Below, piece after piece: positions 21,136 to 47,090 of a DNA stretch of 47,267 bases (position 1 is the stretch's first letter; every line of letters starts with the position of its first letter). Source of the DNA: Octopus bimaculoides. Its lineage: Eukaryota. Both the position numbers and the translations under genes were made by a program. The notes beneath the pieces were generated by a model, which searched no databases, was not told where the DNA came from, and worked only from the letters and a program-made list of their open reading frames with translations. The DNA is taken from the NCBI RefSeq assembly GCF_001194135.2, contig NC_069001.1:20718231-20765497 (forward strand), written 5' to 3'.

Positions 21136-22129
21136 GCAAAATTCTATTTAAGTGTATGTGTGATAGTGACACTCTTTGGAGCTGTGTGTTTGTGAAGATG
21201 TTATGAGAGTAATATGGAGGGTGTGTGCATGTGTGTGTAGAAAGATGATGTGTTAGTATGTATATATTTTGTAGTATGTATATATGTGAGATGTATATAT
21301 GTTAAAAAAAAAAGTGGGTAGCGATTGAGTCCATGGAAAGTGAACATTTGAAGGGAGAAGATAGGTTTTCTTTTGTTCACTTAACAATCGCTTCTTTAAA
21401 AAAAAAAGGGCTTTGGTGATGAAGATTAAGTGTTTATAATGTTCTCTAATGTTCTATTTTGTCTGCAGTTGTGATTTCAAACTCTCAAGTTGAGTAAAGG
21501 TGTAGAAAATATTCAGAGCCAGATGAGAATTTTAAAAAACTTTTTCTTTTTATATTTTCATTATAAAATTCAATATTTTAATTTTTAATGTTAATTTTCA
21601 TTTTTATATTTGAACCCGCAAATTTTGTTTGGCCATTTATTTGTTCTTGATACACGGGCAACTTCAGAACTAATATTTCATTCTATTCATTTATATGCTC
21701 TACTAGCTTCGTATTATATATTAGGCACAGTATACAGTGTTGTCCAGAAAGTCAACTACTGACCGGTTGCTCACATTTTCAATACCTCAAAGATGAAAGT
21801 TCATCTTCAGTGACCACATGTTCATAAAAATGTTCCCTTAAAAGATGCATTAGTGGAACTCCATAATATGGCCTAATGCTATGTTATTGCTAATAATATT
21901 AATTTGGGCAGCATTTGCACTGCTATGGGGATGTGTATTTAACAAATCTATAATTTATATAATTTGAGATTTAACTGAAGCCTAGTAGGACCTATAAACA
22001 CTTTCTACCTGAGCACTGCAGTCTTAAGCCAGTGATACACTGTTGACCTAATCTTAGTATGTAACAGTGTACTACTAACTTTCTGAAGCCTTTTTCCCGA
22101 GCAGTGATGTTTATCTGTCTGTTTGTCAG

Positions 22130-22282
22130 GTGAAACCCATTGCTATGTACTCGCACAAAATCAAGAAACATCACAAGAAAAGCAGCAGCAGCAGCAGCAG
22201 TAGCAGCAGCAGCAGCTCTGATGATGAATTCAAGCACCTGCCAAAGCATGAGCGTAAAATGCGGAAGAAAATGAAAAAAAAA
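22130..22282 (+). CDS. Host-gene exon A (probable start ATG 22145): MYSHKIKKHHKKSSSSSSSSSSSSSDDEFKHLPKHERKMRKKMKKK
   Basis: Acceptor ttatctgtctgtttgtcAG, a 153-nt open frame, poly-Ser encoded by mixed AGC/AGT/TCT codons and donor AAA|GTAATT in phase 0, compatible with the next exon. Below the ORF-track length cutoff. Confidence 0.72.
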
Positions 22283-22519
22283 GTAATTATCAAATAGACT
22301 TGATACTGATAATTCCAAAATAAATCATAATAATGGTGACCATAATCTAATTTTGATTCAGAAAGAGAGAGGTGGGAGAGAGAAAGAGGAGGTGGACAAA
22401 GAAAGTGAGAGGGTTTATGGCATCAATCTAAGTATATTAATCGTATTTATTTTAGTGATACCCAGAGAGGGATGAAAGGTGAAGTTAATTTCATATATTC
22501 AAATTCAGAATATAAGTGC

Positions 22520-22912
22520 AGGCATAGCTGTGCAGTAAGAAGTTTGCTTCCCAGCCATATGGTTCTTTGTTCAGTTCTATTGTGTGGCCCCTTAGGCAAG
22601 TGTCTTCTGCTGCAGCCCGAAGCTGACCAAAGCCTTGTGAGTGGATTTGGTACACAGAAATTGAAAGAAGCTTGTTTTCTATATACAGGGTTGGCCAAAA
22701 GTGCCCCAACAGTAAATCAAAATTTTATAAATACTATCTGTAATCCTGTATTGACTCAAATGGAAAAATGTGTCGCTCAAGAAGGACTTCAGTTTGAACA
22801 ATTTTCATGATGTTTCATATTTAGATGTTTTTATTAAATTCGTTCACTTGTTAAACATAAATCTTGGAATTAAATGGTTTTGATTTACTGTCAGGGGACT
22901 TTTGGGCAACCC

Positions 22913-22947
<35 letters not shown>

Positions 22948-23057
22948 TCCCTCCTCCCATCACTTGACAACCAATGTTGATTTGTTTACATCCCTGTAAC
23001 TTAGCAGTTCAACAAAGGTGGCTGATAGAATAAGTACCCAGCTTTAAAACAAAGTAC
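22520..23057 (+). mobile_element. CORE-type tRNA SINE (OR1-like) with internal microsatellite, interrupted by a MITE and ending at a gap
   Basis: Head GGCATAGCTGTGCAGTAAGAAGTTTGCTTCCCAGCC, CORE-like GTGGCCCCTTAGGCAAGTGTCTTC, and 3' body CTTGACAACCAATGTTG...GTAACTTAGCAGTTC. Confidence 0.8.
22686..22914 (+). mobile_element. Tc1/mariner-derived MITE (229 bp)
   Basis: TA|CAGGGTTGGCCAAAAGTGCCCCAACAGTAAATCAAAA ... TTTTGATTTACTGTCAGGGGACTTTTGGGCAACCCTG|TA. The interior retains a transposase-like C-terminus, MEKCVAQEGLQFEQFS*. Confidence 0.92.
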
Positions 23058-23654
23058 NNNNNNNNNNNNNNNNNNNNAAAGTAACGAAACCAAAAGTAGA
23101 TTTAGTCTGGTGTTTCACAGTTTTTCTTTGCTCTTTGCAGTAATGTTAGATTGAAGTTCCAAAACTTTATATTTTAAAATTGGGAAGCTGTAGCATTAAT
23201 GCCTTTTCAAAGGACATTAGCCAAGAGATTGAGCTACTTTGACTCAATTTTCCAGAAGTTTCCAGATCCAGATATTATGATGCATTTATTTCTTTAAAAT
23301 ACAAAGAAGGTTTTGATTAGAATGTGAGTTTTCACATACAAGACCACACTATATAAAATAGCAAGTTGAAAAATTTTGATCAACTAAGATTATCCAAATA
23401 GTTAGTAGACAAAAACTTCCTCTAAGGTTTGTTTAAAACTTAAAGCAACAAACAAAGGAAATAAATCTGATAAAAATCAGGTGCTCAAATTGTTTAGACA
23501 ATATAAACAATGCAGATTGAAGAGAATCCAGTCTTTAAAAATAGTGAAAGCAACATGTATGTTTTGGTCTTCTTAGACTTCTTCAGCCAACATCTTTGCT
23601 TGGCTTAGGATGCTACTTTTGCCAACTGAGATGACTGGAACAGGGACAGAACGC

Positions 23655-23728
23655 ACCACTGGGAATTGAACTCATGACCTTATGATTGTGAATCGAATAC
23701 CTTAACCACTAAGCTATGTGCCTTCACC
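23655..23728 (-). mobile_element. Isolated tRNA-derived SINE head
   Basis: Reverse complement GGCACATAGCTTAGTGGTTAAGGTATTCGATTCACAATCATAAGGTCATGAGTTCAATTCCCAG; same head type as 43326. Confidence 0.6.
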
Positions 23729-25441
23729 ATAATATTGACATTACATCTATAGCAAAGTTTCTTAACTAAGAATGATCTAGTCCAGATAGCTCTGAATATG
23801 TCTGCAAAATGTTCAAACAAAACGTTTTGTTTTAATTTTTGCCAGTACAAATCATCATTGGTTTCCTCAGTTTACTGTTATATTTTATAGATAGATTTTT
23901 TTTTTGTCACTTCTCTAAGAATTTCATTAGCTTGTTGTGCTAGACTCAAATTATTTAGAGACAAAACTTCATACATGAAAGCTTACATGGAATGGTATTT
24001 TTTGACCGAAAGTGGATGACAAAATACAATTATAAAAAAAATCTGTATTGAACATGATTCCATGTTCAAGGTTCTGATATCAATGATATAGTTAAGATAA
24101 TCAAATGAAATATGTAATGAAATTTGAGATCTTTAGAAATGTTGATATTAAATGTTGATTATATAATTTTAATTAATAATAGGTGCAGCTAGAATTTTTA
24201 TTTTGAAGCAATAAAATTTTATAACTTAGTTTCATCTAATTATCAAATGTTAAATAGGAATAGTGCCTACTTGCTGTGAAGCAAAGTGACAGATGACTTC
24301 CTTGGGAGCAATATATACCAGTTGAATAAATATTTAAACACATGGTTATGTGAGCAAAGGTCTAGCATCATAGTTTTGTAGCCATTTTGTTTGAGTTTAA
24401 ATAATTTTAAAGATAATTTTATTTTTTCTTTTGTTTACATTTAAGTATTTTCTTTGCCAGTTTTGTTCAATGAACATTTTTTTATGATTTAAGGAACGGT
24501 GTCCATGGCCTTCACAAGTCTTCAGAGACTGGTGAGATTGATATGATTGATGTTGAATTTGAAATCTCTAAGTTGAGATCTACAGAAAAAAACAGAGGTG
24601 GAAAGGATATTCCAGCATGTTGACAATTCGAGGAGGAAGGTTTTGGGTACCGCACTTTATACAAGCCTGGGAGGGGCAAAACTGTATGGGTTATGATGAG
24701 CAGAGATGGATGTATACATTATTGGTATGAAACTATCTAGTTCAGAGAATTAGAACCTATTATAGTGGTACTATATTAAGCAGAGTGAAGAAGCATGTCT
24801 GTAATGTGAGTGAGCTTTTTGTGTCAGTGAGTAAGATTTGGCCATTCAATTGGATGACTTACATTGAGATGCAGGCTCAAATATTGTATGTCACCAGCAC
24901 CATCCCAGATGTGGGAAACATACTCTATCATAGATCTTTCTTCCACTTTGAAAATGCAGGAGAAGGTTAGTTTTTGAGATGCAAATTGTGTTTTGCTATG
25001 TACATGACATTACCAGAAAGGATTATGAGAGTTTATGAAGTGTAGCAATTTGGGAGTTTTAATGGCTTGTCTAAGACAAGGGAAGTTCGGCACAAATTTG
25101 TTTCTTAAGAATAAGCAGTAATCATTGCTTGTGTGCTGTTGCAGAAACTAAATTGCTATGTTCAGACTGAAAAATGTTTTTGAGGTCCTTCTTTATGGAA
25201 GCAGTGCATGTTTGATGCAAGATGCATAGGTTGCATGTGGATGATGCCTGATGGAAAAGTTAAAAAGAGGAATAATGAGTTATTTCATTTGTAAATGATG
25301 TAATAGTAAGCAGTCATTAATGTAAAATAAGTGTAAAAAGGACATATTTGAAGGGCACATTGAAGTTAATTGAGTAAAGCGGAGAGAGCTGTGTCTCTGT
25401 TACTGTAGTGGTGTGATCTAGCAGAAAGCTTTAAGTCCAAG

Positions 25442-25626
25442 AAATGATAGGTGGAGTTCATAGCAATGGTGAGTATATTGGAAAGGCTTTGTTGATTTTA
25501 AATGCAGTGACTTGTTTTTGCTAAACTTCTCTAAATGATAGGTGGAGTTCATAGCAATGGTGAGTATATTGGAAAGGCTTTGTTGATTTTAAATGCAGTG
25601 ACTTGTTTTTGCTAGACTTCTCTAAA
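25442..25626. repeat. Near-perfect tandem duplication, 2 x 91 bp
   Basis: AAATGATAGGTGGAGTTCATAGC... starts at 25442 and again at 25533. Confidence 0.95.
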
Positions 25627-25649
25627 GTAAGAGAATATTGGCTTATGAA

Positions 25650-25920
25650 AGCAAGTGGGTAGTGGTAAGAATGTCTCAGGAAAGAATTGCTGGGCAGGTA
25701 TTACAGGTAAAAGCCAACTAGCAGGAGACACAAGGGTAGGCTGTGAACAAGACGGTTGGATAACATCCACAAGCTCAGTTGGTTTCACTTGGGGATCCAG
25801 CTGGGTCAATTGGAGACAGTTGCTTCTGAGAGGATCTGATGGAAGGCATGCTTGAGGACTCTGCTCCCACAACTCTCCCAAGAATAAGTGGGTGAAGAAG
25901 ATGAGGTGAGATGAGATGAA
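25650..25920 (+). mobile_element. RTE (Expander/Rex3-like) LINE 3' end
   Basis: RMSQERIAGQVLQVKPTSRRHKGR...DNIHKLSWFHLGIQ matches the typical RMPQERLARQVLLATPTGKRPRGR...WSRLGVE tail. Confidence 0.65.
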
Positions 25921-27545
25921 AGCTATACATATGAACATTGGGGATGAACTTTCATCTTCGAGATATTGAAATTGAGAGCCATAGGTACTGACCTATGGCT
26001 CCCAATTTCAGTCTGGAAGCTTGTTCTTTTCAGGGATAGGATACACTGTGACATGTTTTCAGAGACAGGGATAGATCCCTATCCTGTAGAAACTTTAGTT
26101 AATTAAATATATATTGCCTGGACTTGGTGGCTATGATTTCAAGTGACTGGAGATGTTTTTATTGTTGGTGGTAATGTATATATAGTGGTGATATTTGTAA
26201 AGTAAAGAAAAGCTTTCTCAAGTGCATATATTGTGGAGTTGGAGCAAAGCAGGAAGAAAATGTGAGAGCTTTCTTTTCAAGAATACTTCTTGTAGATTTC
26301 TCATGGTTGAAGAGTTGTGAATAAGAGAATCTGCAAAGTTGTTAGTAATCTTCTTGGCCAGAGAGCAAGAGGTTTAGCTGCAATTTGGGAAGTAAGAGAG
26401 CTTGCAGATTGTGATGTGTGAAAACAGCTTTTATTTTTTGGATAGTAATCTTGCAGAATTTGTGGTGGCTGGTAAAAAGCCACCCAGTTATTAAAGGTGT
26501 GTGATTTTTATTAAGGGGTGTAGGTCACATTCTGTATCCATGTCAGTGGGACAGAGCTACATAGGAGCCACTTGGGAGATTTGGTGGTATGAGGTAAGTA
26601 AAGAGATATGCCTGAGAAGACAGTTTCAGTCATGTGCTTGGCTGGATTCAGAGTGACATATATGTTACCAAGAATAATTAATATAAAACTAGCAGAGCTC
26701 TGAGGTTCTGCGTAGTGGTAGTTTGCCTTGATTAGACTGGTTGGACAAATTCTTGAATCTCTTGTTTCTTTTGATTTTAAATAAAACCTTTGTGAGGAGG
26801 TCCATATTGGTATTTATAATTTCCACTTATTTTAATAGTTTAAATATTTATCAAAGTTTATATATTAATGAAGATGTGTATATCAAATACTGACATGCTG
26901 TTTATATGTGAAAATATTTGTATGTATCTAAAAAGTATATGGCTGTCAATGTGTTTAATTTGAAAATGGCTTCCTTACTGAAGATTTTTTTCAAGGATCT
27001 TTTCATTAGATATATAATTTTTTGATAACTCAATTCAAACTTACTGATTGAAAAGAAGGAATGATTGGTTGTTCTCCATCACCGACATTTTGTTGTTTTA
27101 GAGTTTCTTAAAAAAAGAAAGAAATTGAGAAATGGAAGACAAATATATATTTTTGTTGATTTTTATTTATCAATGACCTGTTTGTTAATGTCTTGTCTAG
27201 TAATGGTAATGTTTAAGTAGATTGTTATAGTCTTATGGACATTGACATAAGGTCAAAAGAAGCTTTATGTTGTGATGATAGTAGTCGGGGAATGGGTTTC
27301 ATAATATAGCAACCCTGAAAGGACTAAATATAGTAGTGAACAAATTCTCAGCAGTTTTAAAAGTTGCAGTCACATCTTTTAAATTCTAAATCCCTGGGCA
27401 ATATACTCTGCTCTTTGTTTTATATGCTTCTTTTGTATTGTGGTTCAAAGAGCTCTGATCAAAGATACGAAACAATATGTTAATAAACAAATCACTGAGA
27501 CATATTTCTAAATATTTTTTTGTTATTGTCCTTTGTTTTTTCCAG

Positions 27546-27584
27546 ATGGCTAAAAATCCAGGATATGGCATGTACCCAGGAATG
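27546..27584 (+). CDS. Host-gene exon B (39 nt, phase 0-0): MAKNPGYGMYPGM
   Basis: Strong acceptor ctttgttttttccAG and donor ATG|GTAAGG; P/G/Y composition continues into the next exon. Confidence 0.85.
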
Positions 27585-28189
27585 GTAAGGATTCATTTAT
27601 CTCTTTGTGTTGTGTTGTGTAGTGTAGTTGGCTTGGTATGCTGATGGCTACTTCTTGATTAACTCTAGTTCATTTAACACAGATTTGAAGAATTAGAGCT
27701 GAACAAACATTTGGAAGTTAATCCACAGATCCATCATTTATTGTAGATAATAGCTGCAATTCTATTTTATTTGTAATATATTTATACAGAAATAGTGCAT
27801 AATTCTGAACTTAAATTTTAGTTGTTAATCTAACTCAATTATAAATCAACTGATATACATAGGAAAACAAATAAACTCTGAATGAGCCAGTGAAGGAGTT
27901 TGGTTAGTAATGCAGCCAAATGTCCACCAACATAATGTTATTCTAAATATGAATAATCACATCATTGAGATCTTGAAGACACAAGATAATGCATGATTAA
28001 TTCAAAACAAAATGAATAAATAAGCATTACATTTGACAGAATAATCTGAATGCTAAAGAGTTAAGAAAATGGAACTGAATATAACTGAAGTCAGTACAGC
28101 TGCCATAAAAGAGTCTTTGATTTCTACCACTGCTGATGTAGATTATTCAAAGTGACTAGGCTTCCACAGTTCTCATAAGTCATTCATAT

Positions 28190-28420
28190 ACACCTAGTTT
28201 CCTTACCATTCTTTATTGTTTGATGATTGTTATCATGTCAAAGGCCTTCTCTGGGTCAATGAATGCTGGTATAGAAGTTTGCACTATGTTAAGAACTTCT
28301 TTAGCAATGGAAGAGAGCTTCAGTGGTTGCTTGTTTTGGTTAAAACCTGGACTGCATCTCATAGAAGCTAATATCTTCCTAATTAGTTGGATTGATACTC
28401 TGTTACTTTTATAACTTGGT
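28190..28420 (-). mobile_element. Degenerate LINE RT fragment (RTE-like)
   Basis: Minus strand shows remnants of the QxGF / STTDAIF / FIDLEKAFD region (GFNQKQATTEALF, ..DPEKAFD). Confidence 0.5.
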
Positions 28421-30169
28421 CCACCAATTTGATGGTTCTGTAGTTACTTTATACTAGAACATTTCCTTTTCCCCTGTAGCTCTTGCAGTCTCACTCACTT
28501 TGTTCCTTCACACCTTCAGCTTTAATTGGTCTTACATCTGCCAAGTTCTCTTCCTACCTTTCATTCTCAGCTTAAAGATGACAATATTGTGCTCTGTCAA
28601 GCCTTCATGATTATTTGACCAATGTACCATAAATAGTCAACAGTTGATGTTGACCTACCCACTGCTTTCTGGATCTGTGCATAACAAATTATCACTCCAG
28701 ATTCCTCATCAAACTCAAAAATCCTCCTACCTTCTCCCTTCCTTGCACCATGGACTCCCTTCTTTACTCCTTCCTACACATTTACTACAGTCCCTTCCTA
28801 CTACAACAATTTCCTCATCTTTCATGTTTTCTATCATTTTCTCTATCCTTCACTTTCTTCAACACTTTGAACTTATCTGAAGTATATCTTGAGATGGTAT
28901 TCACTTACAACCCTAGAACTTTTCAGTCCTCAGTTCTACTAGTATCAATTTTTCACTCAAGTCACACTCTTAATTCTACAGAAATCAAGATAGTAACACC
29001 ATGCATAAATTCTGGACACCCTTGACATATAAACTTGTACATGTCCCTTACCATTGTCTCATTACTTTCCTTCCATACACAACATATGTCCACTCTTCTT
29101 CTGATCAGTGTCACCACCACTTCCTGTTATCATTTCCATATTTCATGTCCTAATCCATGTTTCTTTAGTCTCAAACTGTTTCATATTAAGATACTTGTGT
29201 AAAGTTAATCATATCAGCCCTGAGTGATTGGAGGTAACATATGTTTGTACCTGGACTCCATCTCCAGAACACTTAAAAACAAACTTGCCTTAAATAAAAA
29301 GAAATTGAGTGAAAAATTACTCAACAGAAACACCTAAAAATTGTATTATCTAGAATTGGCAATCTGTCAATCTAGTACCATTATTACACCTCTTGTTACT
29401 TTCTTGACTTCTTTCTCAATTATCTCTTCTTACAGTTCTAGAACTGGATTACTTTCCATGAGTAATCCTTTTGCAGGACTGGCAGTCTTCCCAATGTATG
29501 AACTTTCATTTTACATAGATGTTTCTTGTGCAAGGAACACCAAACTGGTTTTAAACAGTTTGCAGGAATATTTTTGCAGGTTACACCAGGATTATTCTTC
29601 ATGTATCTGAATTATTTTTTACTACAGTCAAAATTAACACCTGGCTTTCTAGTGTGTCCGCAGGAATAACAAAGTGATATGACGGTTATAAGTTAGCATG
29701 GTTTTTTTTCTTGTGCTGATGTGCAATAATCATCAATGAGTGATAAACACCTTTCTTGGATGAATCTAATAAAATAGTTGCTGTTTGACTGGTAGTGAGC
29801 AATTGACAAGATGTTGGAAATGTAGCCCACCTACCTACTTGGCCATCTGTAGTTTTTTCTGTTTTTGTGGAGTAATTATCAAGTAATTATTTTTGTCACA
29901 AATCTCCTATGTGCATTATAGTCATGAATAAGCTGTGGTATTAAGATTTCTGATACAAACCCACCCTTTTATCATCTGGTTGCCTGTGACTACAACATTG
30001 GACCCTTGGGGGTCCTACATGTGCAATAAATTGGTTATATTTCTACAATACACAAAATATATTAATAAATTTTTCTATACAATACCTAATAATATTTAAT
30101 TATTAAAATATAAGGTCATTTTATGAAACATCAAATGGCTATAGGGATCCAGTAGAGTAAAAACAGGAA

Positions 30170-30660
30170 TCAAAGGTGTTCATAGACAAAAAATGGTTGA
30201 AAACCATTTTCCTGGACTCTGATAATTAAGCTTTTTGTCTTGTTTACATTACAAACTATTCTGGCACAGAAAATGAAAATCTCCACGTTTTGCAAGATGT
30301 TTTTACTTTTGAACTCCTTACATAAGGTTTTTGATGTCATGGCTGTTCCCATAGCACCTTGTAGAAATGTCCAAATAGCAAGAAAACAATCATAAATTTT
30401 AACTTGGTGAAAACCAGGTGTGAACATCAGTGTCATCATGTTCTTCATTCAGCCAGTAGTCTCTGTAACTTGGTTTGAATAGAAAATATTCCACGTATAG
30501 TCCAAGTCTAGTGAATATTTTCTTGTCATCTGATGATACTGTTGTAAAGTGTTTAGCATGGTAAAACTTTGGCTTCTGCTCCCAAAATTTAAGAGGCATG
30601 TAAATGTCTATACAGGCACTTCTTCCTTGCACACTACGTTTGATTCTACTCAGTGTTTCT
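30170..30660 (-). mobile_element. Possible piggyBac-like transposase remnant
   Basis: YHAKHFTTVSSDDKKIFTRLGLYVEYFLFKPSYRDYWLNEE resembles the piggyBac EIKxFxGxLxxxGxxKLPSxRDYWS motif. No TIR or TTAA was identified. Confidence 0.35.
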
Positions 30661-31830
30661 GGAACACATTTATACAATGTCATTCATGCACACATACATT
30701 GCATATCCAATGGAGCATGCTTGCTTCATTTCTTCTGCATTCAAGTCAAATGTCTCACTTTAATTCAGCATCACATTTCTAACATACGCATCATGAAATC
30801 TGCCCTTCACTCTAAGGGAAAGGGCCTTTGTTACCAGCAGTGGTAGTTGCTCCATGAGCTTGTTCTTACCTTGGTTACTATTCTTTTAAAGCAACAATCT
30901 CCTCTGTTAATTATGTGTTGTAGGTAACAAAAGTATCAACTTCTAATGAATGATCCAATTAAGAGGATTTATTTTCGGTATGTTCATAGTATAAACTACT
31001 CCAGTGCATCTGTTGCATATGAAGCTTACTTTCTCTGTTAATTTGCCTGTGTTTATTGCTTATATTGTACACTGTGTATGAAGTTTAAACCTATTCCTTT
31101 TCTGCATATCAGGCAAAGCCATTTCCATGAAGATACTGGGCTTCAGTCTTCTTTCTTATTTACTAAAATCTTACTCTAGGTTTAGTTTCCAGGCCAGGAA
31201 TGTCTTCTCTAATTCCTCTCTGGATTCAGCTGTGAGAACCAAATCACCAACATATAGGAGTTCCCATGGACAACCAATCTTAAACTCCTTTGCAATGGCC
31301 TGTAAGACTGATGAATAGAAGGGAACTGAGGGCTGAGCTTTGTTAGACTTCTACCTTCATGCTTAATTGTTCACTGAAATTGTTGACTCACATTACTGCA
31401 TTTTTGTACGTAGCTTGTATATCCTTCATATGCCATTCATCTTCGCCTAGTTTCCTCAGTGACCACCAAATTACTGAATGTGGTTCTCTATCAAATACCT
31501 TTTCCAAGTAACAAATGCTAGGCATACTGGTGGTTTACTCTTAGCCAAGTATTTCTTTTGCAGTTGCCTTTCTGGAGAGATCGTATCCATGGTACTTCCT
31601 CCAAGCACAAAGACAAACTGCATCACATCTAGGTCTATTCTGTCATGGATCAGTTGTGCTATCCCCCCCCCCTCTCTCACAACCTGATCTAGTAGTCTGA
31701 TTCCTCCCTAGTTGCTGCTCTCTAAGGCATCTTTGCCTTTGTTGCAGTTTGTAATGTTACTTCTATGCCAGTAATTGATTATAACTCATTCCTGTATAAC
31801 TTGATTAACTATCCAAGTGGTAATCTTGAA
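30660..31830 (-). mobile_element. RTE-clade LINE fragment, same family as 10800-13200
   Basis: Collinear similarity with about 11090-12150, e.g. TTCACTCTAAGGGAAAGGGCCTTTGTTACCAGCAGTGG versus TTCACTCTGAGGGAAAGGACCTTTGTTATCAGTAGTGG. Confidence 0.8.
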
Positions 31831-32168
31831 ATTCCTTTTACTCTAACATAATAAAAACAATCCATTAGACATACATAGATCTATTTGGTTATAATGAGTT
31901 CTTAAAAAGACTGAGTGGGACAGTTAAACAGAACCTGATAACAGTTAATGAGCCTGAAATTGTTGTCAGTTTGATGCGTATGACTTTTAGTGAGAACTTG
32001 AAGTTGTCTTGATTTCATTGCTTAGAAATTTAGTTTTGAAACATAAATTTCAATAAACTGAATACTTTTTTAGTTTTTATATTGTATTGGTGTAAAGAGA
32101 CTGATTATACAACATCATTGATTACTTATTATTCAGTAATTTTGATTATACACTTTATTTTTTCACAG

Positions 32169-32310
32169 AACTACCCTCCAGGTACTGGGTATCCTGCTCA
32201 TCCCCCAAATCCAGCTTATCCCCCAGGTAGTGTACCTCCCTCTGGACCAGGCTACCCTGGATCTGTGATGCCAGGATACCCCCCACAAGCAGGGTTCCCA
32301 CCAGCTCCAG
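32169..32310 (+). CDS. Host-gene exon C (142 nt, phase 0-1): NYPPGTGYPAHPPNPAYPPGSVPPSGPGYPGSVMPGYPPQAGFPPAP(G)
   Basis: Acceptor ctttatttttttcacAG, donor CAG|GTATGT, synonymously varied Pro/Gly codons, and in frame with exons A and B. Confidence 0.9.
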
Positions 32311-32530
32311 GTATGTTATATTTGTATTCACTAGGTGTTATTCTGTAAACTGCTAATATCCATAAAGATTGTGCAAGTTATGATCTTAAATACTGCTCCA
32401 GCTTACTACAGAAGACTAGGTGTTACCTCGTAAGCCAGGTAGTTCTCAAGCAAACTCTACTGGATATCACAACTGAATGCCTACAAAGGAAAAATAGAAA
32501 GTGAGTGAGTAAAGAATGAATGCACTCCTT

Positions 32531-33984: not shown

Positions 33985-34185
33985 CTCACCAACATCGCTT
34001 GACAACTGATGTTGCTGTGCTTACGTCCCAGTAACTTAGCAGTTCATCAAAAGAGAAAAAGTACTACGCTTGTAAAGAATAAGTCCTGTAGTCGATTTGT
34101 TTGGCTAAAACCCCTTAAGGTGGTGCTCCAGCATGGCCACAGTCAAATGTCTGAAACAAGTAAAAGAAGAAAGGAATAGAAGAAT
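33985..34185 (+). mobile_element. OR-type SINE 3' body/tail; further copies at 34556-34690 (+), 35438-35660 (-) and a short tail at about 47170-47215 (+)
   Basis: CTTGACAACTGATGTTG...GTAACTTAGCAGTTC...GGTGGTGCTCCAGCATGGCCACAGTCAAATGTCTGAAACAAGTAAAAGA. Confidence 0.8.
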
Positions 34186-35337: not shown

Positions 35338-35671
35338 TGCCGTCTTAAGGACATACTGAGTGGTTGGCTGGTGACCTATCGAGTCTAGGGTCACAATTCT
35401 GACCTATGCATGTTGAAGCTTGTTAAAATGGCATACTTTTTTTTTGTTTTACTTGTTTCGGTCATGTGACTGCTGCCATGCTGGAGCACTGCTTTTAGTT
35501 GAAGAAATCAACCCCAAGATTTATTCTTTGCAAGCCTAGTACTTATTCTTTCAGTGTGTTTTGCCAAACGGCTAAGTTATGGGGAGATAAACACAGCAAC
35601 GTAGGTTGTCAAGTGATGGTGGGGGTATAAACAAACATATGCACACACACACACACACATATATATATACG

Positions 35672-37618: not shown

Positions 37619-38880
37619 CGAGGGGTGTCTGAAAAGTCTTGAGCCTCAAAAAAACTAAACATGGTACAAGATTTCTGATGATTTATTTTTCAACATAGTC
37701 CCTCTCGATGGCTGAACACTTTCTCCAGGTGTAGAAGAACTCTTTTGTTTGGGACTCTAAGAAACTTCCTACAGCGTCTATGACGTTATTGTCACGGGCA
37801 AAATGGTGACCCGCCAGGGCTTTTTTCATTTTTGGAAATAGATGAAAGTTAGAGGGAGCTAAGTCTGGCGAATAAGGCGGATCGGGAACAAGTTCGGATC
37901 CACAATCACGAATTGTTGCCATGGCAACTGAGGTGTCGGCTGGAGCATTGTCGTGATGAAAAAGGACTCCTCTGGTGAGCATTCCCGGCTTTTTTTCTTT
38001 GATTGCTTCTCAGAGGTGTTTCAGTAGCTGAGAATAATACAGCCCTGTCACAGTGTGACCCTTTTCAAGGTAATCGATCAGCAAGACACCCTGAGAATCC
38101 ACAAAAATGGACGCCATGACCTTGCCAACTGAAGGAATGACCCTGGCCTTCTTTGGGGTAGTATATGTGTGCTTCCACTGCCTTGATTGTTCTTTGGTTT
38201 CAGGCTGGTAGTGATGAACCCAACTTTCGTCCATAGTAATGAAACAAGCAAGAAAATTCTCTTCATCAGCTTCAAACAGTTCCAGATTGCTCGTGGACAA
38301 AGTGCACCTGGTGCATTTCTGTTCAGGAGTCAAAAGGCGAGGGACCCACCTTGCAGAAACCTTTGAGAACCCAAGTTCTTTTGTAACAATGTTGTCTGCT
38401 CTTTCAGTTGAGATGTCCAGTCTCTAGGCTATCTGACAACATGATATTCGGCGATCTTGCATTATCATACCAAGAGCAAGGTCAAGGTTGTCCTTGGTGG
38501 TTGCAGTTGGAGGTCTCCCTGGTCTTGGTTCATCTTCCACACTCTCCCTGCCACGCTTGAATTCATTTACCCATCGTTTGTCTGTTGCATATAAAGTAGC
38601 ATTGTCTGTTAAGGTTCTCACCGTATCTTCATGGATTTCTGATGGAGTCATGCCTTTCAAATGAAGGTACTTTATGACAGCACGATACTCAGTTTCCTCC
38701 ATTTTCCTTGTAAATTCGAAGCATGTTTATTCAAAAATCTGCAACAAAAAAATTAAAATATCAGAATCATGAAAATGAGCAAGAATACTCCGAAAAGACT
38801 GTACTTACCAGAAAAAATTGTTTCAACTATATAGCAGCACCTATTCTAGGTTAGGCTCAAAACTTTTCAGACACCCCTCA
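37619..38880 (-). mobile_element. Full-length mariner (DD34D) transposon, 1262 bp
   Basis: 28-bp TIRs CGAGGGGTGTCTGAAAAGTCTTGAGCCT and AGGCTCAAAACTTTTCAGACACCCCTCA, with TA on both flanks inside (TA)n. Confidence 0.96.
37683..38702 (-). pseudogene. Mariner transposase pseudogene (340 codons, two in-frame stops)
   Basis: The three track ORFs lie in one frame. Motifs WVPRLL, ITMDESWV, HHDNAP and YSPDLAPSNF; the third catalytic Asp is changed to Asn. Confidence 0.95.
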
Positions 38881-39599: not shown

Positions 39600-41915
39600 A
39601 TAAAAATATGAATGAAAAAATTAGGAAAGAAAATAATTATTAAGAATAAAAGATTAAACTTTATATACAAAGTTTTAATAAAAAAAACCTTTAACGATAT
39701 TATAAACAATAAAGACTAATTATTAATCAAATATTATCAATCTGAAATAATCAAAAATATATCAACACTATTCAAATCGGAGTTCTAATATTATGTAGAA
39801 ATAAAACTATAACTTCTAAATAATTTAGTGTTAAATAAGTTATCTATTAAAAATAATCTATAAAGAACCAAATGAATAATATAAAAAACAAGAATACATA
39901 TTATTTTCAAATAGTAGAAAATCTTTAGCAAAGTAAAAACAGTACTTATCCATATTTTTCCGTAATTCAAACTGAAACTAAGACGTTATCTAATAGCGTT
40001 TTAAGCAAGAGGTTGCGCGAAAATACTACGTTAAAATAGAGAATAGAATACGAAAACATGAATGAAATAATAATACTTAAAAAATGAATGAGAAATTTAA
40101 AATTTATGGTACTTAGGTTTAGGGATAAAATCGTTATTCTGTTAGCTAGAAGAACTATTATTGAATTTGTTGGAAAACTCTTGACTAGGGCTGACACTCC
40201 AGATAACTTCGATATAGCTATGGGGTCGAGTGACTCAGCTGAAATTACGAATCTAGTAGGTGCGTACGTCTTGTATAGCCGAAATAAAAAAATCCCGGAG
40301 CAGCGGTGCAGTTTATACAGGGATGATGCCTTATTCATCATCCCTAGTAACAATAAATCAACCATTGAAAGAATAAGAAAGAAAATTAGAAAATTTTTTA
40401 GAAGCTTCAACTTAAGTATTATATATAAATATAGTACTAAGATAGTAAATTTTTTGGACACTACTCTAAACATAGACTCTAAATTGTACTACCCCTATAG
40501 AAAAGAGAACGAGGTTACAAGATATGTGAATAAATTATCCAATCAGCCCCCCCCCCCCCCAATGTATTAAAATCAATAGTAAAAAGCGTTTCTGAGAGAA
40601 TTACTAAGTTATCTTCAAATATTGATATTTTTAATTTCCATTCACACCACTACAATGTTGCTTTGTCTAAAGTGGGATATGACCAGAAAATTTCTTTCCT
40701 CAGTCCTGGAAGGCCAACTCATTTTGATAGAGAAATTAATAATGATGTTAGTAATATTAAGTCTAATAACTTAACTTGTGATGAAAGACTAAATGAAAAA
40801 CCATCCTACATACCTGATATTTTAAGTAATAAGAAAAATAATAGAGTACATTTTGATAGGAGACTACATACTAATACTAGCAAAAAACCTAGGTTAGATA
40901 AAAGTAATGGCAATGTAAATGATATAGTTACTCCACAAAATAGTAAGGATTCCACAAAAAAGATGTGCAAAATTATAAATCATCATAATAATATTGTCCT
41001 AGAAAATAATGGTAATCAAAAGATATCCTATACTCACTCACACAATAAATTTAAAATTAAAAATCCTGTCTGCCTCAATATCTCTTTCAACTGTGCAGTA
41101 TCCAGCAATATTAACAAAAAATTTATGGATATTTTACAAAAAAATTTGCCTTCCCACAGATATAGTAGAATCTTTTCATGTTATACAGTCCTAATCTCTT
41201 ACTCAGCCCTTCCTAATATAGGTACAATCATAGCTAGGTTAAATAGAAAGAAAATAAGATTAGCTAGAATCGTTGAAAATAAGAATGGTGGTAATAGTTA
41301 TAGGAATATCAATAATAATTTAATCAATGTCAATAATAATATTACTAATAATTATAGAAATGGAAGTGGAAATAACAATGACAATAGCAATTATGAATGT
41401 AGCAGCAATATACTTAGTCCTGTCAACCATAACTTAAACCAGCATAATGAATATAGTGGTATTGATGTTGGAAGTACAATTGAAATAAATAGTAGTAACA
41501 CCTCTAATGATAATAATGTGAATTATGGGTCTAGTTCATATATGGAAATAGAAAATATTAGTATGCCTGATGCTGCAGGAATGATTCTATCTGATAGCAT
41601 GTTGGAAATGGAGTTAGATGGTAATAGAAGTGATCATAATAAGCCTGATAACAGAATTAAAATAGGGGAAATAATATCAATGTGAATAATTGTAACAACA
41701 ATAATTTAAATCTTAGTAATATTATTGGTGTTGCTGATGGTTCCACTGGTTGCAATTGTAGAAATAAGTCCCGTTGTCCGTTATTAGGCCAATGTCTCAC
41801 CAGAAACGTAGTATATAAATGCATTAATAAGTACTATAACTGATAATTATATTTACTTGGGATGTACGATTAATTTGAAACAGCGCATATATAACCACTT
41901 GTCAGTTAGTTTTAG
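39600..41915 (+). mobile_element. Penelope-like element (RT + Cys-rich linker + GIY-YIG), Nematis-like motifs, with long Asn-rich insertions
   Basis: FDIAMGSSDSAEITNLVG, LYRDDALF, NFLDTTLN, YRKE..RYVNKLSNQP, ISYSALPNI, CNCRNKSRCPLLGQCL, VVYKC and YIYLGCT..LKQRIYNH. Frameshifts at the C14 run (40547-40560), near 41660 and near 41840. The 5' part is degenerate. Confidence 0.88.
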
Positions 41916-44429: not shown

Positions 44430-47090
44430 TTCCTACTGAATCCACCAAATGCCTCAATGCAGGAGGGTCCTAGGTGACTTTAACCTCCCAAATGTTAAAT
44501 GGCCTGAAGGTCACATCCTCTCTGGGATGTCACTGCATGAGCAAAGCCAGGCAATATCTTTGTTAGAACTCTCCAACATGCTATGCTGTTCATGGAACAA
44601 GTGATACTCCAACCAATCAGGGGAAACAATATTTTAGATCTCTGCTTCATGAACAATGTGAGTCTAATCCATAATGTGAAAGTAACACCTACATCTCTCT
44701 CAGAGCATAACATTATAGAATTAACAATGTATGGTCCTAGACAACCCACTGACACCCATCCCATCAGGACCACTCAAGCCATTTCCAACCTGAATTTCCA
44801 CAGGGCGGACTGGAAGTCAACTCGCAAAGAGATTCAAAATCAAAACTGGCATGACAGCCTTTCTATACAAGACAATGACCTCAAACTAAGTCATTTTATG
44901 TCAACCATACAAGATATATGCACCAAATATGTGCCAGCAAGAAAGGCCAGCAAACATGCCAATAGAATTCCCATAGACAGGAAAATCCTTATGAGACACA
45001 AACAAAGTTCTCAAACCAGTTGAATAGAGAACTGGAGGTTAGTAAAAGGGCTAAATTAAAACTAACACTGTTAGAAATAGAAAATAAGATTAAACTCTCT
45101 CATGAAAAGGAGACAGTGGAGAAGGAGAAGAGAGCAGTAGAAAGCATAAAAACAAACCCCAAGGCTTTCTATAGATTTGCAAAGGAGACTGCTACGGTGC
45201 AGTATAAGATAGGACCCCTATTCCTGCCTAATGGCTCACTGACTGCAGATCCCACANNNNNNNNNNNNNNNNNNNNNNNNNNNNNNNNNNNNNNNNNNNN
45301 NNNNNNNNNNNNNNNNNNNNNNNNNNNNNNNNNNNNNNNNNNNNNNNNNNNNNNNNNNNNNNNNNNNNNNNNNNNNNNNNNNNNNNNNNNNNNNNNNNNN
45401 NNNNNNNNNNNNNNNNNNNNNNNNNNNNNNNNNNNNNNNNNNNNNNNNNNNNNNNNNNNNNNNNNNNNNNNNNNNNNNNNNNNNNNNNNNNNNNNNNNNN
45501 NNNNNNNNNNNNNNNNNNNNNNNNNNNNNNNNNNNNNNNNNNNNNNNNNNNNNNNNNNNNNNNNNNNNNNNNNNNNNNNNNNNNNNNNNNNNNNNNNNNN
45601 NNNNNNNNNNNNNNNNNNNNNNNNNNNNNNNNNNNNNNNNNNNNNNNNNNNNNNNNNNNNNNNNNNNNNNNNNNNNNNNNNNNNNNNNNNNNNNNNNNNN
45701 NNNNNNNNNNNNNNNNNNNNNNNNNNNNNNNNNNNNNNNNNNNNNNNNNNNNNNNNNNNNNNNNNNNNNNNNNNNNNNNNNNNNNNNNNNNNNNNNNNNN
45801 NNNNNNNNNNNNNNNNNNNNNNNNNNNNNNNNNNNNNNNNNNNNNNNNNNNNNNNNNNNNNNNNNNNNNNNNNNNNNNNNNNNNNNNNNNNNNNNNNNNN
45901 NNNNNNNNNNNNNNNNNNNNNNNNNNNNNNNNNNNNNNNNNNNNNNNNNNNNNNNNNNNNNNNNNNNNNNNNNNNNNNNNNNNNNNNNNNNNNNNNNNNN
46001 NNNNNNNNNNNAAATTAGGAGAGTGACTGCATGACTTCCTGAATGGTAGAAGTCAGACAGTTGCAGCCAATGGAGAACTATCTAGGGAAATGCAAATATT
46101 GAGCGTTGTTCCGCAAGGAACTGTCCTGGGGCCACTACTGTTCATAGTGGCCCTTCTGGATATGCCCACGGTCACTCGGACAGCCATTGTCACTAGCTAC
46201 GCTGATGACACAATACTATCTCAGGCAATAAAGAATCCTGATGATATCATAAGCCAGCAGAATGACCTAAATGCAATATACAAGTGGGCAGAGCAAAATA
46301 ATATGCGGTTCAATGTTAAAAAATTTCAAGTACTGTGCTACAAGGTCACAAGTGCCTCCCAACTGGCATACACAGGGCCTGGAAGTACTGCAATCCCAAA
46401 ACCACAAACGGTGAGAGACTTGGGCATCAGCATGTATAGTGATGCATCATTTCACATGCACATTGTCAAGTTGATAGCAAAGTGCAGACAACTGGCAGGG
46501 TGGATACTGAGGACATTCCGAACAAGGGATCAAAAAGTCATGTTGACTCCATGGAAGACATTTGTTCTGAGCTGCCTAGACTATTGTTCTCAGTTGTGGT
46601 CACCACACAGTGTCAAGCTAACAACAGAACTCAAGGCAATTCAGCGTCACTATACTAAAAAGATTGCCACAGTCCAGCAGATGAACTACAGGGAGCGAGT
46701 GAAGGCACTAAGTCGTTATTCCATGTAGTGCAGGTAAGAGAGATATGTAATAATTTGCATATGGGAAATACTGGACGGACTGATACCAAACTTTGGGATC
46801 AAGTTCTACATGAATGCCTGCACAGGTGGCCACTGTGTAGTACCAAGGGTACCGTCCAATGCATCTCACATAAGAACAAGGTATTGTAACAGCCTCAATT
46901 TCAGAGGCTCTTTAATGCCCTGCCAAAACAATTGAGAGACCGGCAAGACATGGATGTAGAGGTCTTCAAGACAAAACTCGACACTTTCTTATTCACGATA
47001 CCAGACGAACCGATGGCTCAAAATGCGACACAGTTGAGGGCAGCGATGTCAAATTCTCTTATACACCACCAGATGTGCCATCAAAACTCT
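44430..47090 (+). mobile_element. CR1-clade LINE ORF2 remnant (end of APE endonuclease + RT), spanning a gap
   Basis: RGNNILDLCF, LSEHNII, FHRADW, KAFYRFAK, VPQGTVLGPLLF, YADDT, LDYCSQLWSP and FKTKLDTFL...PDEP; several stops. Confidence 0.92.

What the first reader, a model, noticed from the sequence alone, without database searches (positions are those of the whole stretch)
22130..32310. Hidden three-exon gene whose modules look like PRR13 in reverse order
Seen: exons 22130-22282, 27546-27584 and 32169-32310 have canonical splice sites and join in frame. They give MYSHKIKKHHKK-(S)13-DDEFKHLPKHERKMRKKMKKK-MAKNPGYGMYPGM-NYPPGTGYPAHPPNPAYPPG...FPPAPG (106+ aa), mostly invisible in the ORF track. 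Known (from memory of human PRR13): a Pro-rich region with NPAHPP/FPPG, then KKMQKKMKK, then His/Lys-rich + poly-Ser + DSD at the C-terminus. Inference: the same three modules occur here as [HK-polySer-acidic]-[RKMRKKMKKK]-[GYPP/PAHPP], a full reversal rather than a circular permutation. This is either a rearranged PRR13 relative or a convergent low-complexity protein combining an NLS-like basic patch, a CK2-type Ser/acidic tract and a P/G/Y domain like those of annexin A7/A11.
Basis: partly seen in the sequence, partly recalled or inferred. Interest (0 to 1): 0.72.

Follow-up and report, generated by a model that had tools for sequence, protein, structure and literature searches.

The report
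Annexin gene start with conserved leader
The three small exons are real and most likely form the start of an ordinary annexin A7/A11-type gene whose calcium-binding core lies beyond the window, preceded by an uncharacterised 46-residue leader that is conserved in bivalve annexins.

Summary
Exons 22130-22282 (ATG at 22145), 27546-27584 and 32169-32310 have AG/GT sites and join in frame. The assembly gap 23058-23077 lies inside intron 1 and crosses no reading frame.

Five annotated bivalve annexins (annexin A7-like or B12-like, isoform X2, in Mya, Mercenaria, Ruditapes and Dreissena, plus a Sinanodonta annexin) start with the same leader. Its order is His/Lys-rich run, poly-Ser, DDE, [FY]KHLPKHERK, basic helix. 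A 9-13 codon mini-exon follows, then a Pro/Gly/Tyr-rich head and four annexin repeats.

In the 71-kb Sinanodonta gene the exon layout matches the window. Its first core exon lies 36 kb downstream of the leader exon. That explains why no core exon appears in the 15 kb that remain in the window.

It could not be checked in the window itself.

BLASTP with composition adjustment shows no similarity to human PRR13 as I recall it (best E = 0.82; that sequence is unverified). However, the same module, including DDEFKHLPK, also forms the C-terminal tail of two small stand-alone Pro-rich proteins laid out like PRR13 (loci L003 and L008). The resemblance therefore has some substance.

Verdict: a new member of a known kind, of modest interest.

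The parts
22130..22144 (+). 5' end of the leader exon, upstream of the ATG. It is probably 5' UTR and follows a 3' splice site (AG at 22128-22129).
   Evidence: A polypyrimidine tract plus AG lies 15 nt before the ATG. The same arrangement, an acceptor 8-31 nt before the ATG, is found in L001, L002, L005 and Sinanodonta L009. In those loci an in-frame stop lies between acceptor and ATG. In the window these 5 codons are open.
22145..22180 (+). Start codon and His/Lys-rich run MYSHKIKKHHKK
   Evidence: The Met aligns with the initiator Met of the bivalve annexin leaders (MGKHKKH...).
22181..22219 (+). Poly-Ser run of 13 residues (AGC x6, AGT, AGC x5, TCT)
   Evidence: Relatives carry 7-13 Ser here, written with mixed Ser codons, so the run is kept at the protein level.
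22220..22258 (+). Acidic DDE followed by the signature FKHLPKHERK
   Evidence: H, L, P and K are invariant in 10 of 10 aligned sequences. The match to L008 over DDEFKHLPKHER has E = 2e-6 after composition adjustment.
22259..22282 (+). Basic Met/Lys patch MRKKMKKK, ending at a phase-0 donor (GT at 22283-22284)
   Evidence: AlphaFold2 predicts a helix over residues 34-45; mean pLDDT is 91 for residues 31-40 and 82 for residues 41-46. Every relative has K|GTN at the same point.
22283..27545 (+). Intron 1, nominally 5263 nt, containing the assembly gap 23058-23077 and a MITE-like element
   Evidence: No reading frame of the model crosses the gap.
27546..27584 (+). Mini-exon MAKNPGYGMYPGM (39 nt, phase 0 at both ends). 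It begins with an ATG that could act as a second start.
   Evidence: Both splice sites are strong. GMYPGM is identical to the start of the L001 Pro/Gly/Tyr exon. The counterpart is the 27-nt mini-exon GLIPPGSVP in Sinanodonta and GKIPPGSVP in L002.
27585..32168 (+). Intron 2 (4584 nt)
32169..32310 (+). First Pro/Gly/Tyr-rich head exon (47 codons plus 1 nt, donor GT at 32311). Further head exons and the annexin core are expected downstream of the window.
   Evidence: It is the only such stretch in the window. Exons 2-3 together are 33% Pro, 20% Gly and 11.5% Tyr, like the bivalve annexin heads. tblastn matches the heads of P0001 and P0009.

Best explanation
The three segments are the first three coding exons of an annexin gene of the A7/A11 type, meaning an annexin with a long Pro/Gly/Tyr-rich, low-complexity N-terminal head. 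They belong to the isoform that carries an extra 46-residue N-terminal leader.

Gene layout:
- One or more non-coding 5' exons, not identified.
- The leader exon.
- A 13-codon mini-exon.
- Pro/Gly/Tyr head exons.
- Four annexin repeats. The rest of the head and the whole core lie 3' of the window or in its gaps.

How the leader probably works (inferred, not shown): it is a disordered, charge-patterned segment. A His/Lys run and a Ser13-DDE tract that resembles a CK2 substrate precede the invariant HLPKHERK motif. That motif caps a short, strongly basic helix with a narrow Met/Leu stripe. The helix could act as a classical NLS, as a binder of acidic lipid or RNA, or both. Phosphorylation of the adjacent Ser/acidic tract would neutralise it. 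The leader would then be an electrostatic switch that sets where the phase-separating, Ca2+/phospholipid-binding annexin sits: nucleus or nucleolus versus cytoplasm or membranes.

Because exon 2 is 39 nt and starts with an ATG, transcripts that skip exon 2, or that start translation at 27546, would give isoforms without the mini-exon or without the leader.
For: Shown:
- Splice sites and frame are correct.
- phmmer of the spliced peptide against 1.84 billion proteins hits the N-terminus of Mya arenaria ANXA7-like protein.
- Five annotated bivalve annexins share the order leader, mini-exon, Pro/Gly/Tyr head, four annexin repeats. They are P0007 Mya, P0009 Mercenaria, P0010 Ruditapes, P0011 Dreissena and P0014 Sinanodonta.
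- In the Sinanodonta gene (L009) the leader exon is 46 codons from ATG to a phase-0 K|GT donor, the same as in the window. A 27-nt phase-0 mini-exon and then Pro/Gly/Tyr exons follow. The first annexin-repeat exon lies about 36 kb from the leader exon, with a 23-kb intron inside the head. Finding no core within 15 kb in the window is therefore expected.
- The K|GT donor is conserved in the window, L001, L002 and L003 and in L009. An acceptor lies just upstream of the ATG in the window, L001, L002, L005 and L006 and in L009.
- Codon changes in the 21-codon core are mostly synonymous.
- GMYPGM is shared with L001.
- AlphaFold2 predicts a helix at residues 34-45; mean pLDDT is 91 for residues 31-40 and 82 for residues 41-46. 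The rest is disordered.

From established knowledge and the literature:
- The annexin A7 proline-rich domain phase-separates (PMC10634317).
- The Pro-rich regions of annexins A7 and A11 carry type-1-like ALG-2 binding motifs (PMC5037681).
- PRR13/Txr1, which I recall as having a similar His/Lys, poly-Ser tail, is described as a nuclear protein (PMC11936294).
Against: - No annexin-repeat exon, and no further Pro/Gly/Tyr exon, was found on the + strand between 32311 and 47267. The annexin identity rests on orthology of the 5' exons only.
- About 2 kb of that stretch is gaps.
- No transcript data were available, so the junctions 22282/27546 and 27584/32169 are not demonstrated for this genome.
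- No annexin from the window's own species could be retrieved. The first protein search found nothing.
- In the window, unlike the bivalve loci, no in-frame stop separates the acceptor at 22130 from the ATG. An upstream coding exon is therefore not excluded.
- The bivalve mini-exon boundaries differ from those of the window's exon 2.
- The functional model of the leader is inference only.
Confidence: 0.8

Rival explanations
1. There are two separate transcription units. Exon 1 is the last coding exon of a stand-alone small Pro-rich protein with the PRR13 layout. Its Pro-rich exons lie upstream, its donor is unused, and the protein ends ...KKMKKKVIIK*. The annexin gene starts independently at the ATG of exon 2 (27546).
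For: - The same module is the C-terminal tail of stand-alone Pro-rich proteins in L003/L004. There the ORF stops one codon after the conserved K|GTA (KQKV*), and the next gene is Isy1.
- It is also the tail in L008, a complete 185-aa uninterrupted ORF.
- In the window the 5 codons between the acceptor at 22130 and the ATG are open.
- Reading through the donor reaches a stop after 4 codons.
- Exon 2 starts with an ATG.
Against: - No Pro-rich open stretch exists anywhere in the 22 kb upstream, on either strand.
- The Met at 22145 aligns with the proven initiator Met of the bivalve leaders, which have in-frame stops just upstream.
- The leader is 46 codons from ATG to donor in both the window and Sinanodonta.
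- The phases of exon 1 and exon 2 match.
- The leader exon lies on the same strand, 5 kb upstream of annexin-type head exons, as in annotated bivalve genes.
Confidence: 0.08
2. One reading: a small stand-alone 'reversed PRR13' protein made of leader plus Pro/Gly/Tyr domain, with no annexin core, that is either a rearranged PRR13 relative or a convergent low-complexity protein.
For: - No annexin exon is seen in the window.
- The compositional modules resemble those reported for PRR13: proline about 30% of residues and a conserved run of ten Ser at the C-terminus (PMC11911201).
- Small proteins that combine the module with a Pro-rich domain do exist (L003, L008).
Against: - Exon 3 ends at a good donor in phase 1, not at a stop.
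- The orthologous 5' exons in five bivalves continue into annexin cores.
- No composition-corrected similarity to the recalled PRR13 was found (best E = 0.82, E = 8.4).
- A DNA inversion cannot reverse module order while keeping the peptides, because the AGC Ser repeat would read as Ala on the other strand, as the antisense ORF 21992-22318 shows.
Confidence: 0.07
3. Not a gene: chance open frames around an (AGC)n microsatellite and a Pro-rich low-complexity patch.
For: The poly-Ser run is an almost pure AGC repeat in the window, and all three parts are low-complexity.
Against: - The non-repetitive motif is conserved across species with mostly synonymous codon changes.
- The splice sites are conserved.
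- Database E-values reach 5.8e-20.
Confidence: 0.02

Closest known systems
Bivalve annexin A7-like / annexin-B12-like isoform X2 (Mya arenaria P0007, Mercenaria mercenaria P0009, Ruditapes philippinarum P0010, Dreissena polymorpha P0011) and the Sinanodonta woodiana annexin P0014 (gene locus L009)
   Same: - The same leader: Met, His/Lys run, poly-Ser, acidic residues, [FY][KR]HLPKHERK, basic helix.
- The same phase-0 K|GT donor, and the same 46-codon length in Sinanodonta.
- A phase-0 mini-exon, then Pro/Gly/Tyr head exons.
   Different: - The window starts MYSHK rather than MGK or MPK.
- Its mini-exon is 13 codons, starts with Met and already contains GMYPGM. In bivalves GMYPG or GLYPG opens the next exon.
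- Its poly-Ser run is an almost pure AGC repeat.
- Its annexin core is not in the window.
Vertebrate annexin A7 (synexin) and annexin A11
   Same: - A long Pro/Gly/Tyr-rich, low-complexity N-terminal head in front of a four-repeat core.
- The head starts M-x-x-PGY-like. This comparison is from memory of the human sequences.
- That head mediates phase separation (PMC10634317) and binds ALG-2 through type-1-like motifs (PMC5037681).
   Different: To my knowledge the vertebrate proteins have no His/Lys, poly-Ser, HLPKHERK leader. Orthology to A7 rather than A11 was not resolved here.
PRR13 / TXR1 (vertebrate proline-rich protein 13)
   Same: - A proline-rich protein with a conserved run of about ten Ser at its C-terminus (PMC11911201).
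- Described as a nuclear protein (PMC11936294).
- From memory, the Ser run is flanked by a His/Lys run, DSD and a KKMQKKMKK patch, much like the leader's composition.
   Different: - In PRR13 the module is C-terminal to the Pro-rich region and ends the protein.
- From memory, the K/M patch precedes the His/Lys run, and the [FY]KHLPKHE signature is absent.
- There is no annexin core.
- No composition-corrected similarity was found. The PRR13 sequence I used is unverified.
Unnamed small Pro-rich proteins with the same module as C-terminal tail (L003/L004 from ENA metagenome contigs; L008 from JGI record Ga0206687_1092350)
   Same: - Collinear module: His/Lys run, S11-13, DDEFKHLPK, basic K/M/Q patch.
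- DDEFKHLPKH is identical to the window in L008.
- Of the 21 core codons compared with L008, 9 are identical, 8 differ synonymously and 4 non-synonymously.
   Different: - The module is at the C-terminus, after a 130-155 aa Pro/Gly/Tyr(/His)-rich domain, and is followed by a stop.
- There is no annexin core. In L003 the next gene is Isy1.
- The source organisms are unknown.

Membership tests
Annexin, A7/A11 type (long-head annexins) | C-terminal core of four annexin repeats (Pfam PF00191) | tested here: inconclusive
   No PF00191 or annexin-like exon lies on the + strand between 32311 and 47267 (Pfam scan of all three frames; tblastn with P0001 and P0009). About 2 kb of that stretch is gaps. 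In the orthologous Sinanodonta gene the first core exon lies about 36 kb from the leader exon, which is beyond what the window holds.
Annexin, A7/A11 type (long-head annexins) | Long Pro/Gly/Tyr-rich, low-complexity N-terminal head encoded by several small exons | tested here: met
   Exons 2-3 are 33% Pro, 20% Gly and 11.5% Tyr, close to the bivalve annexin heads. tblastn matches those heads.
Annexin, A7/A11 type (long-head annexins) | Orthology of the 5' exons and intron positions with annotated annexin genes | tested here: met
   The leader alignment has invariant HLPK. The 46-codon leader exon, phase-0 K|GT donor and phase-0 mini-exon match the Sinanodonta gene L009.
Annexin, A7/A11 type (long-head annexins) | ALG-2 / sorcin binding motifs in the head (type 1: PPYP, PYP or PxYP, then YP) | tested here: inconclusive
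   By eye, PAYP (a PxYP form) and YPPGTGYP (YP, four residues, YP) occur in exon 3. The motif definition is from PMC5037681.
PRR13 / TXR1 | Small protein (about 150-190 aa) with a Pro-rich N-terminal part and the Ser run at the C-terminal end | tested here: not met
   In the window the Ser run is N-terminal to the Pro-rich part, and exon 3 ends at a donor in phase 1, not at a stop. The PRR13 features are taken from PMC11911201.
PRR13 / TXR1 | Sequence similarity beyond composition | tested here: inconclusive
   Composition-adjusted BLASTP of the window peptide against recalled human PRR13 gives a best E of 0.82. Recalled PRR13 against the L008 protein gives E = 8.4. The PRR13 sequence is from memory, and its exact look-up failed.
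PRR13 / TXR1 | Conserved run of about ten Ser next to basic and acidic residues | tested here: met
   S13 is flanked by HHKK and DDE. This is a compositional feature only.
Leader/tail module (un-named; His/Lys run, poly-Ser, acidic, [FYW][KR]HLPK, basic patch) | Signature [DE][DEG][EQ]-[FYW][KR]HLPK followed by a Lys-rich patch, directly after a Ser run | tested here: met
   Alignment A2 of 10 sequences has invariant H, L, P and K. The profile search reaches E = 5.8e-20. Window versus L008 gives E = 2e-6.

The most novel reading that the evidence does not exclude
The roughly 45-residue module (His/Lys run, poly-Ser, DDE, [FY]KHLPKHE, basic helix) is a single conserved, portable unit that has moved between two kinds of Pro-rich protein. 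It is the C-terminal tail of small stand-alone proteins laid out like PRR13 (L003, L008). In molluscs it has become the N-terminal leader of an annexin A7/A11-type gene.

A possible route is capture of a terminal exon. In L003 the stop codon sits one codon after the conserved K|GTA, so use of that GT as a donor would turn a last exon into an internal one. If this is right, vertebrate PRR13's tail could be a degenerate relative, and the module would be a shared localisation or phospho-switch device.
Probability: 0.3. Interest if true: 0.5.

Novelty: new member of a known kind. Interest (0 to 1): 0.3.

Why it matters
As a gene, this is an ordinary annexin 5' end, and orthologous models are already in public databases.

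Three points give it modest value:
- A very low-complexity, multi-exon N-terminus that ORF finders miss can still be validated by cross-species conservation of a short non-repetitive motif and of its splice sites.
- The leader is conserved in at least five bivalve genera and in the window. It has no Pfam family, no relative in the PDB and no mention of its motif in the searched literature.
- It sits directly in front of the kind of low-complexity annexin head that drives phase separation in annexin A7 and is tied to neurodegeneration in annexin A11. It is therefore a natural test case for how a charge-patterned, probably phospho-regulated leader controls such a domain.

The shared module with PRR13-like small proteins hints at exon shuffling among low-complexity proteins.

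Tried and rejected
- A word-indexed search of 5.8 billion proteins with the spliced peptide found nothing. The exhaustive phmmer search was needed instead.
- Pfam on the peptide gave only sub-threshold, composition-driven hits (SR-25, Dehydrin and others). The L003 and L008 proteins gave the same kind of result.
- A Pfam scan of all + strand open segments downstream of exon 3 found only a LINE RVT_1 hit. No further Pro/Gly/Tyr stretch exists anywhere in the window.
- Exact look-ups of the window's exon-1 ORF, with either start, found no contig. The organism is therefore not identified.
- Exact look-ups of P0009, P0007 and P0001 genes were not on record. P0014 worked.
- An exact look-up of human PRR13 as I recall it failed. 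All PRR13 sequence comparisons are therefore provisional.
- The Txr1 paper PMC1536059 is not held.
- A scan of JGI metagenome contigs with the leader profile found nothing. A degenerate DNA pattern for DDEFKHLPK found L008 plus one chance match in an unrelated ORF, L007.
- A profile search of the PDB found nothing.
- Pfam on reverse-transcriptase-like and transposase-like fragments in the introns and elsewhere in the window gave no hits.
- Considered and rejected: N-myristoylation of the leader. The bivalve MGK start would allow it, but the window has MYS.

Full report
**1. Observation**

- Exon 1 is 22130-22282. Its acceptor is tgtttgtcag|GTGAAA and its donor AAAAAA|gtaatt. The first ATG is at 22145.
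- Exon 2 is 27546-27584. Its acceptor is ttttttccag|ATGGCT and its donor GGAATG|gtaagg. It is 39 nt long.
- Exon 3 is 32169-32310. Its acceptor is ttttcacag|AACTAC and its donor CTCCAG|gtatgt. It is 142 nt long, so one base is carried into the next exon.

The gap flagged by the scan's program (23058-23077) lies inside intron 1 (22283-27545). No exon or reading frame of the model crosses it. Its left flank ends in a dispersed repeat and its right flank is unique. Continuity across it cannot be judged from the window. This affects only the intron length and the small chance of a hidden mini-exon.

**2. What lies around it**

The window is AT-rich (36% G+C), has nine assembly gaps, and is full of microsatellites and transposon debris. 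Exon 3 is the only Pro/Gly/Tyr-rich open stretch on either strand.

A Pfam scan of every + strand open segment of 18 residues or more between 32311 and 47267 found only a LINE reverse transcriptase. The rest of the gene is therefore not in the window, or sits in its roughly 2 kb of downstream gaps.

**3. Relatives**

The word-indexed protein search found nothing. An exhaustive phmmer search of 1.84 billion representative proteins gave four hits, all to the exon-1 part.
- One was the N-terminus of Mya arenaria 'ANXA7-like protein' (WAQ96410.1).
- Three were short ORF fragments that read from the leader into an intron.

Searching with the Mya protein and reading the top hits showed five bivalve annexins that all begin in the same way. 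They are Mya annexin-B12-like isoform X2, the annexin A7-like isoform X2 proteins of Mercenaria, Ruditapes and Dreissena, and a Sinanodonta annexin. Each one runs through:
- Met, a His/Lys run, 7-11 Ser, then D-S-S-D or DDE;
- [FY][KR]HLPKHERK, then R.KKL[RK]KQMKK;
- in four of the five, G[KL]IPPGSVP and G[ML]YPG (Dreissena has HGHHMPHGMYPG instead);
- about 250 residues rich in Pro, Gly and Tyr;
- four annexin repeats.

The window peptide aligns with these along its whole length.

**4. Gene structure**

The Sinanodonta gene could be fetched as locus L009. Mapping its protein back onto the DNA gives this layout:
- a leader exon of exactly 46 codons, from the ATG to a phase-0 donor AAG|gttagc;
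- an acceptor 22 nt upstream of the ATG, with an in-frame stop between the two;
- a 27-nt phase-0 mini-exon (GLIPPGSVP);
- Pro/Gly/Tyr exons from 8 kb downstream, with a 23-kb intron inside the head;
- the first annexin-repeat exon about 36 kb from the leader exon, in a 71-kb gene.

The window has the same plan: a 46-codon leader, a phase-0 K|GT donor, a 39-nt phase-0 mini-exon, then a Pro/Gly/Tyr exon.

Three other loci carrying the leader (L001, L002, L005) share the acceptor just before the ATG and the in-frame stop upstream; L001 and L002 were also checked for, and share, the K|GT donor. L001, L005 and L006 also have a Pro/Gly/Tyr exon downstream.

The L001 Pro/Gly/Tyr exon starts GGMYPGM, which matches GMYPGM in the window's exon 2.

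**5. Selection**

In the 21-codon core (DDE... to the donor), L001 and L002 differ at 10 codons, and all 10 changes are synonymous. The window differs from L005 at 9 codons synonymously and 5 non-synonymously.

The bivalve Ser runs use mixed Ser codons. The run is therefore kept at the protein level. In the window it is an almost pure AGC repeat and is probably length-polymorphic; that last point is an inference.

**6. Best explanation**

The exons are the 5' coding end of an annexin A7/A11-type gene, in the isoform that carries the leader (confidence 0.8). The annexin core itself is not seen in the window. This is the main weakness of the explanation, and it is what the decisive next steps address.

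**7. How the leader may work**

Everything here except the structure prediction is inference.

AlphaFold2, run with the 11-sequence alignment, predicts a helix at residues 34-45 (KHERKMRKKMKK). Mean pLDDT is 91 for residues 31-40 and 82 for residues 41-46. Everything N-terminal of the helix is disordered.

The helix is strongly basic, with Met/Leu at i, i+3/4 and i+7. It contains K-K-x-K-K type NLS cores.

The Ser13-DDE tract upstream matches the CK2 preference for Ser followed by acidic residues, which is established knowledge.

I therefore propose a phospho-regulated electrostatic switch. When unphosphorylated, the basic helix targets the annexin to the nucleus or nucleolus, or to acidic lipid or RNA. 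When phosphorylated, the Ser/acidic tract masks the helix.

The context fits this idea:
- The annexin A7 proline-rich domain phase-separates (PMC10634317).
- The Pro-rich regions of annexins A7 and A11 bind ALG-2 through type-1-like motifs (PMC5037681). Exon 3 has PAYP and YPPGTGYP.
- PRR13/Txr1, which I recall as having a compositionally similar tail, is described as nuclear (PMC11936294).

Because exon 2 is 39 nt long and starts with an ATG, isoforms lacking the mini-exon or the leader are possible. In the spliced mRNA that ATG sits in the context AAAATGG.

**8. The PRR13 idea**

The literature confirms that PRR13 is about 30% proline and has a conserved ten-Ser run at its C-terminus (PMC11911201). 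My recalled human sequence could not be verified.

With that sequence, composition-adjusted BLASTP finds nothing. The window peptide against PRR13 gives a best E of 0.82. The L008 protein against PRR13 gives E = 8.4. As recalled, PRR13 also lacks the [FY]KHLPKHE signature.

A literal 'reversal' is not a plausible event either. An inversion would turn the AGC Ser run into Ala, as the antisense ORF 21992-22318 shows.

The lead is not empty, however.

One fragment (P0006) comes from compact-genome contigs L003 and L004. There a Pro/Gly/Tyr-rich exon (MSYPNQNPGYP...) splices in frame, by my reading of the splice sites, to an exon encoding ...HHKKHKHHKHHKH-S11-DDEFKHLPKWQRKQAKKQKV*. The next gene downstream is Isy1.

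A degenerate DNA search for DDEFKHLPK in JGI metagenome contigs found L008. L008 holds a complete, uninterrupted 185-aa ORF. It has about 130 Pro/Gly/Tyr/His-rich residues and then HVKHHKKHKKHHG-S13-DDEFKHLPKHQRKQMKKMKKAQKKAHKMYY*.

These two proteins have the PRR13 layout, and their tail is collinear with the annexin leader. The window against L008 gives E = 2e-6 over DDEFKHLPKHER after composition adjustment. Of the 21 core codons, 9 are identical, 8 differ synonymously and 4 non-synonymously.

So the module occurs in two contexts. Whether PRR13 proper belongs with them is open.

**9. Rivals**

(a) Two genes: exon 1 is the terminal exon of a stand-alone PRR13-like gene, and the annexin starts at 27546 (confidence 0.08).
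- For: the L003 and L008 precedent; the five open codons before the ATG in the window; the stop four codons past the donor.
- Against: no upstream Pro-rich exon in 22 kb; the conserved initiator Met, donor and exon length.

(b) A stand-alone reversed-PRR13 protein (0.07). It is opposed by the phase-1 donor at the end of exon 3 and by the bivalve orthologues.

(c) Chance (0.02).

**10. Novelty and verdict**

The gene kind is known, and orthologous models are public. The window adds a new member.

The leader has no Pfam family, no relative in the PDB and no literature mention of its motif. That, together with its second life as a tail of small Pro-rich proteins, gives modest interest. I score interest at 0.3.

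Noticed in passing
window 53-1433: A roughly 700-nt palindrome. The arms are about 53-740 and 816-1433 and are 84-95% complementary. A 10-N gap (603-612) lies inside one arm. It is either a real inverted repeat or a fold-back assembly artefact.
   Followed up: partly
window 22681-22947 (intron 1): A MITE-like element with 42-nt terminal inverted repeats (22681-22722 and 22878-22919, 90% match), followed directly by a (GT)n microsatellite. The assembly gap 23058-23077 sits just past a dispersed repeat whose other copies are at 33993-34051 and 35539-35663.
   Followed up: partly
window 37686-38726, minus strand: A remnant of a Mos1/mariner-type transposase, broken into three ORF pieces (Pfam Transposase_1 at 1.3e-18, plus HTH_48 and HTH_32).
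   Followed up: yes
window 6162-6941 (+) and 46027-46725 (+): LINE reverse-transcriptase fragments (RVT_1 at 7.8e-12, and 2.6e-10). The second is cut off by the gap 45257-46011.
   Followed up: yes
window 40088-41682 (+): Two overlapping long ORFs. One is 160 aa and carries a reverse-transcriptase-like YRDDALFI motif. The other is 383 aa and Asn-rich. Neither has a Pfam hit. They may belong to an undescribed or decayed retroelement.
   Followed up: partly
window 21992-22318, minus strand: A 108-aa antisense ORF across exon 1 with a poly-Ala run. It is a by-product of the (AGC)n repeat and not a gene.
   Followed up: no
L003 7143-7997 (also L004) and L008 (minus strand, whole contig): Small stand-alone Pro/Gly/Tyr-rich proteins (about 223 and 185 aa) that end in the same module as the annexin leader: His/Lys run, poly-Ser, DDEFKHLPK and a basic patch. 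They share PRR13's layout. The source organisms are unknown, and there is no Pfam family for them.
   Followed up: partly
P0001 (Mya arenaria WAQ96410.1) residues about 56-190: The GenBank model reads through the mini-exon donor (GSVP|V...) and carries about 130 residues that are not rich in Pro, Gly and Tyr. The RefSeq model P0007 has a Pro/Gly/Tyr-rich head there instead. This is probably a mis-annotated intron or a frame error in the GenBank model.
   Followed up: partly
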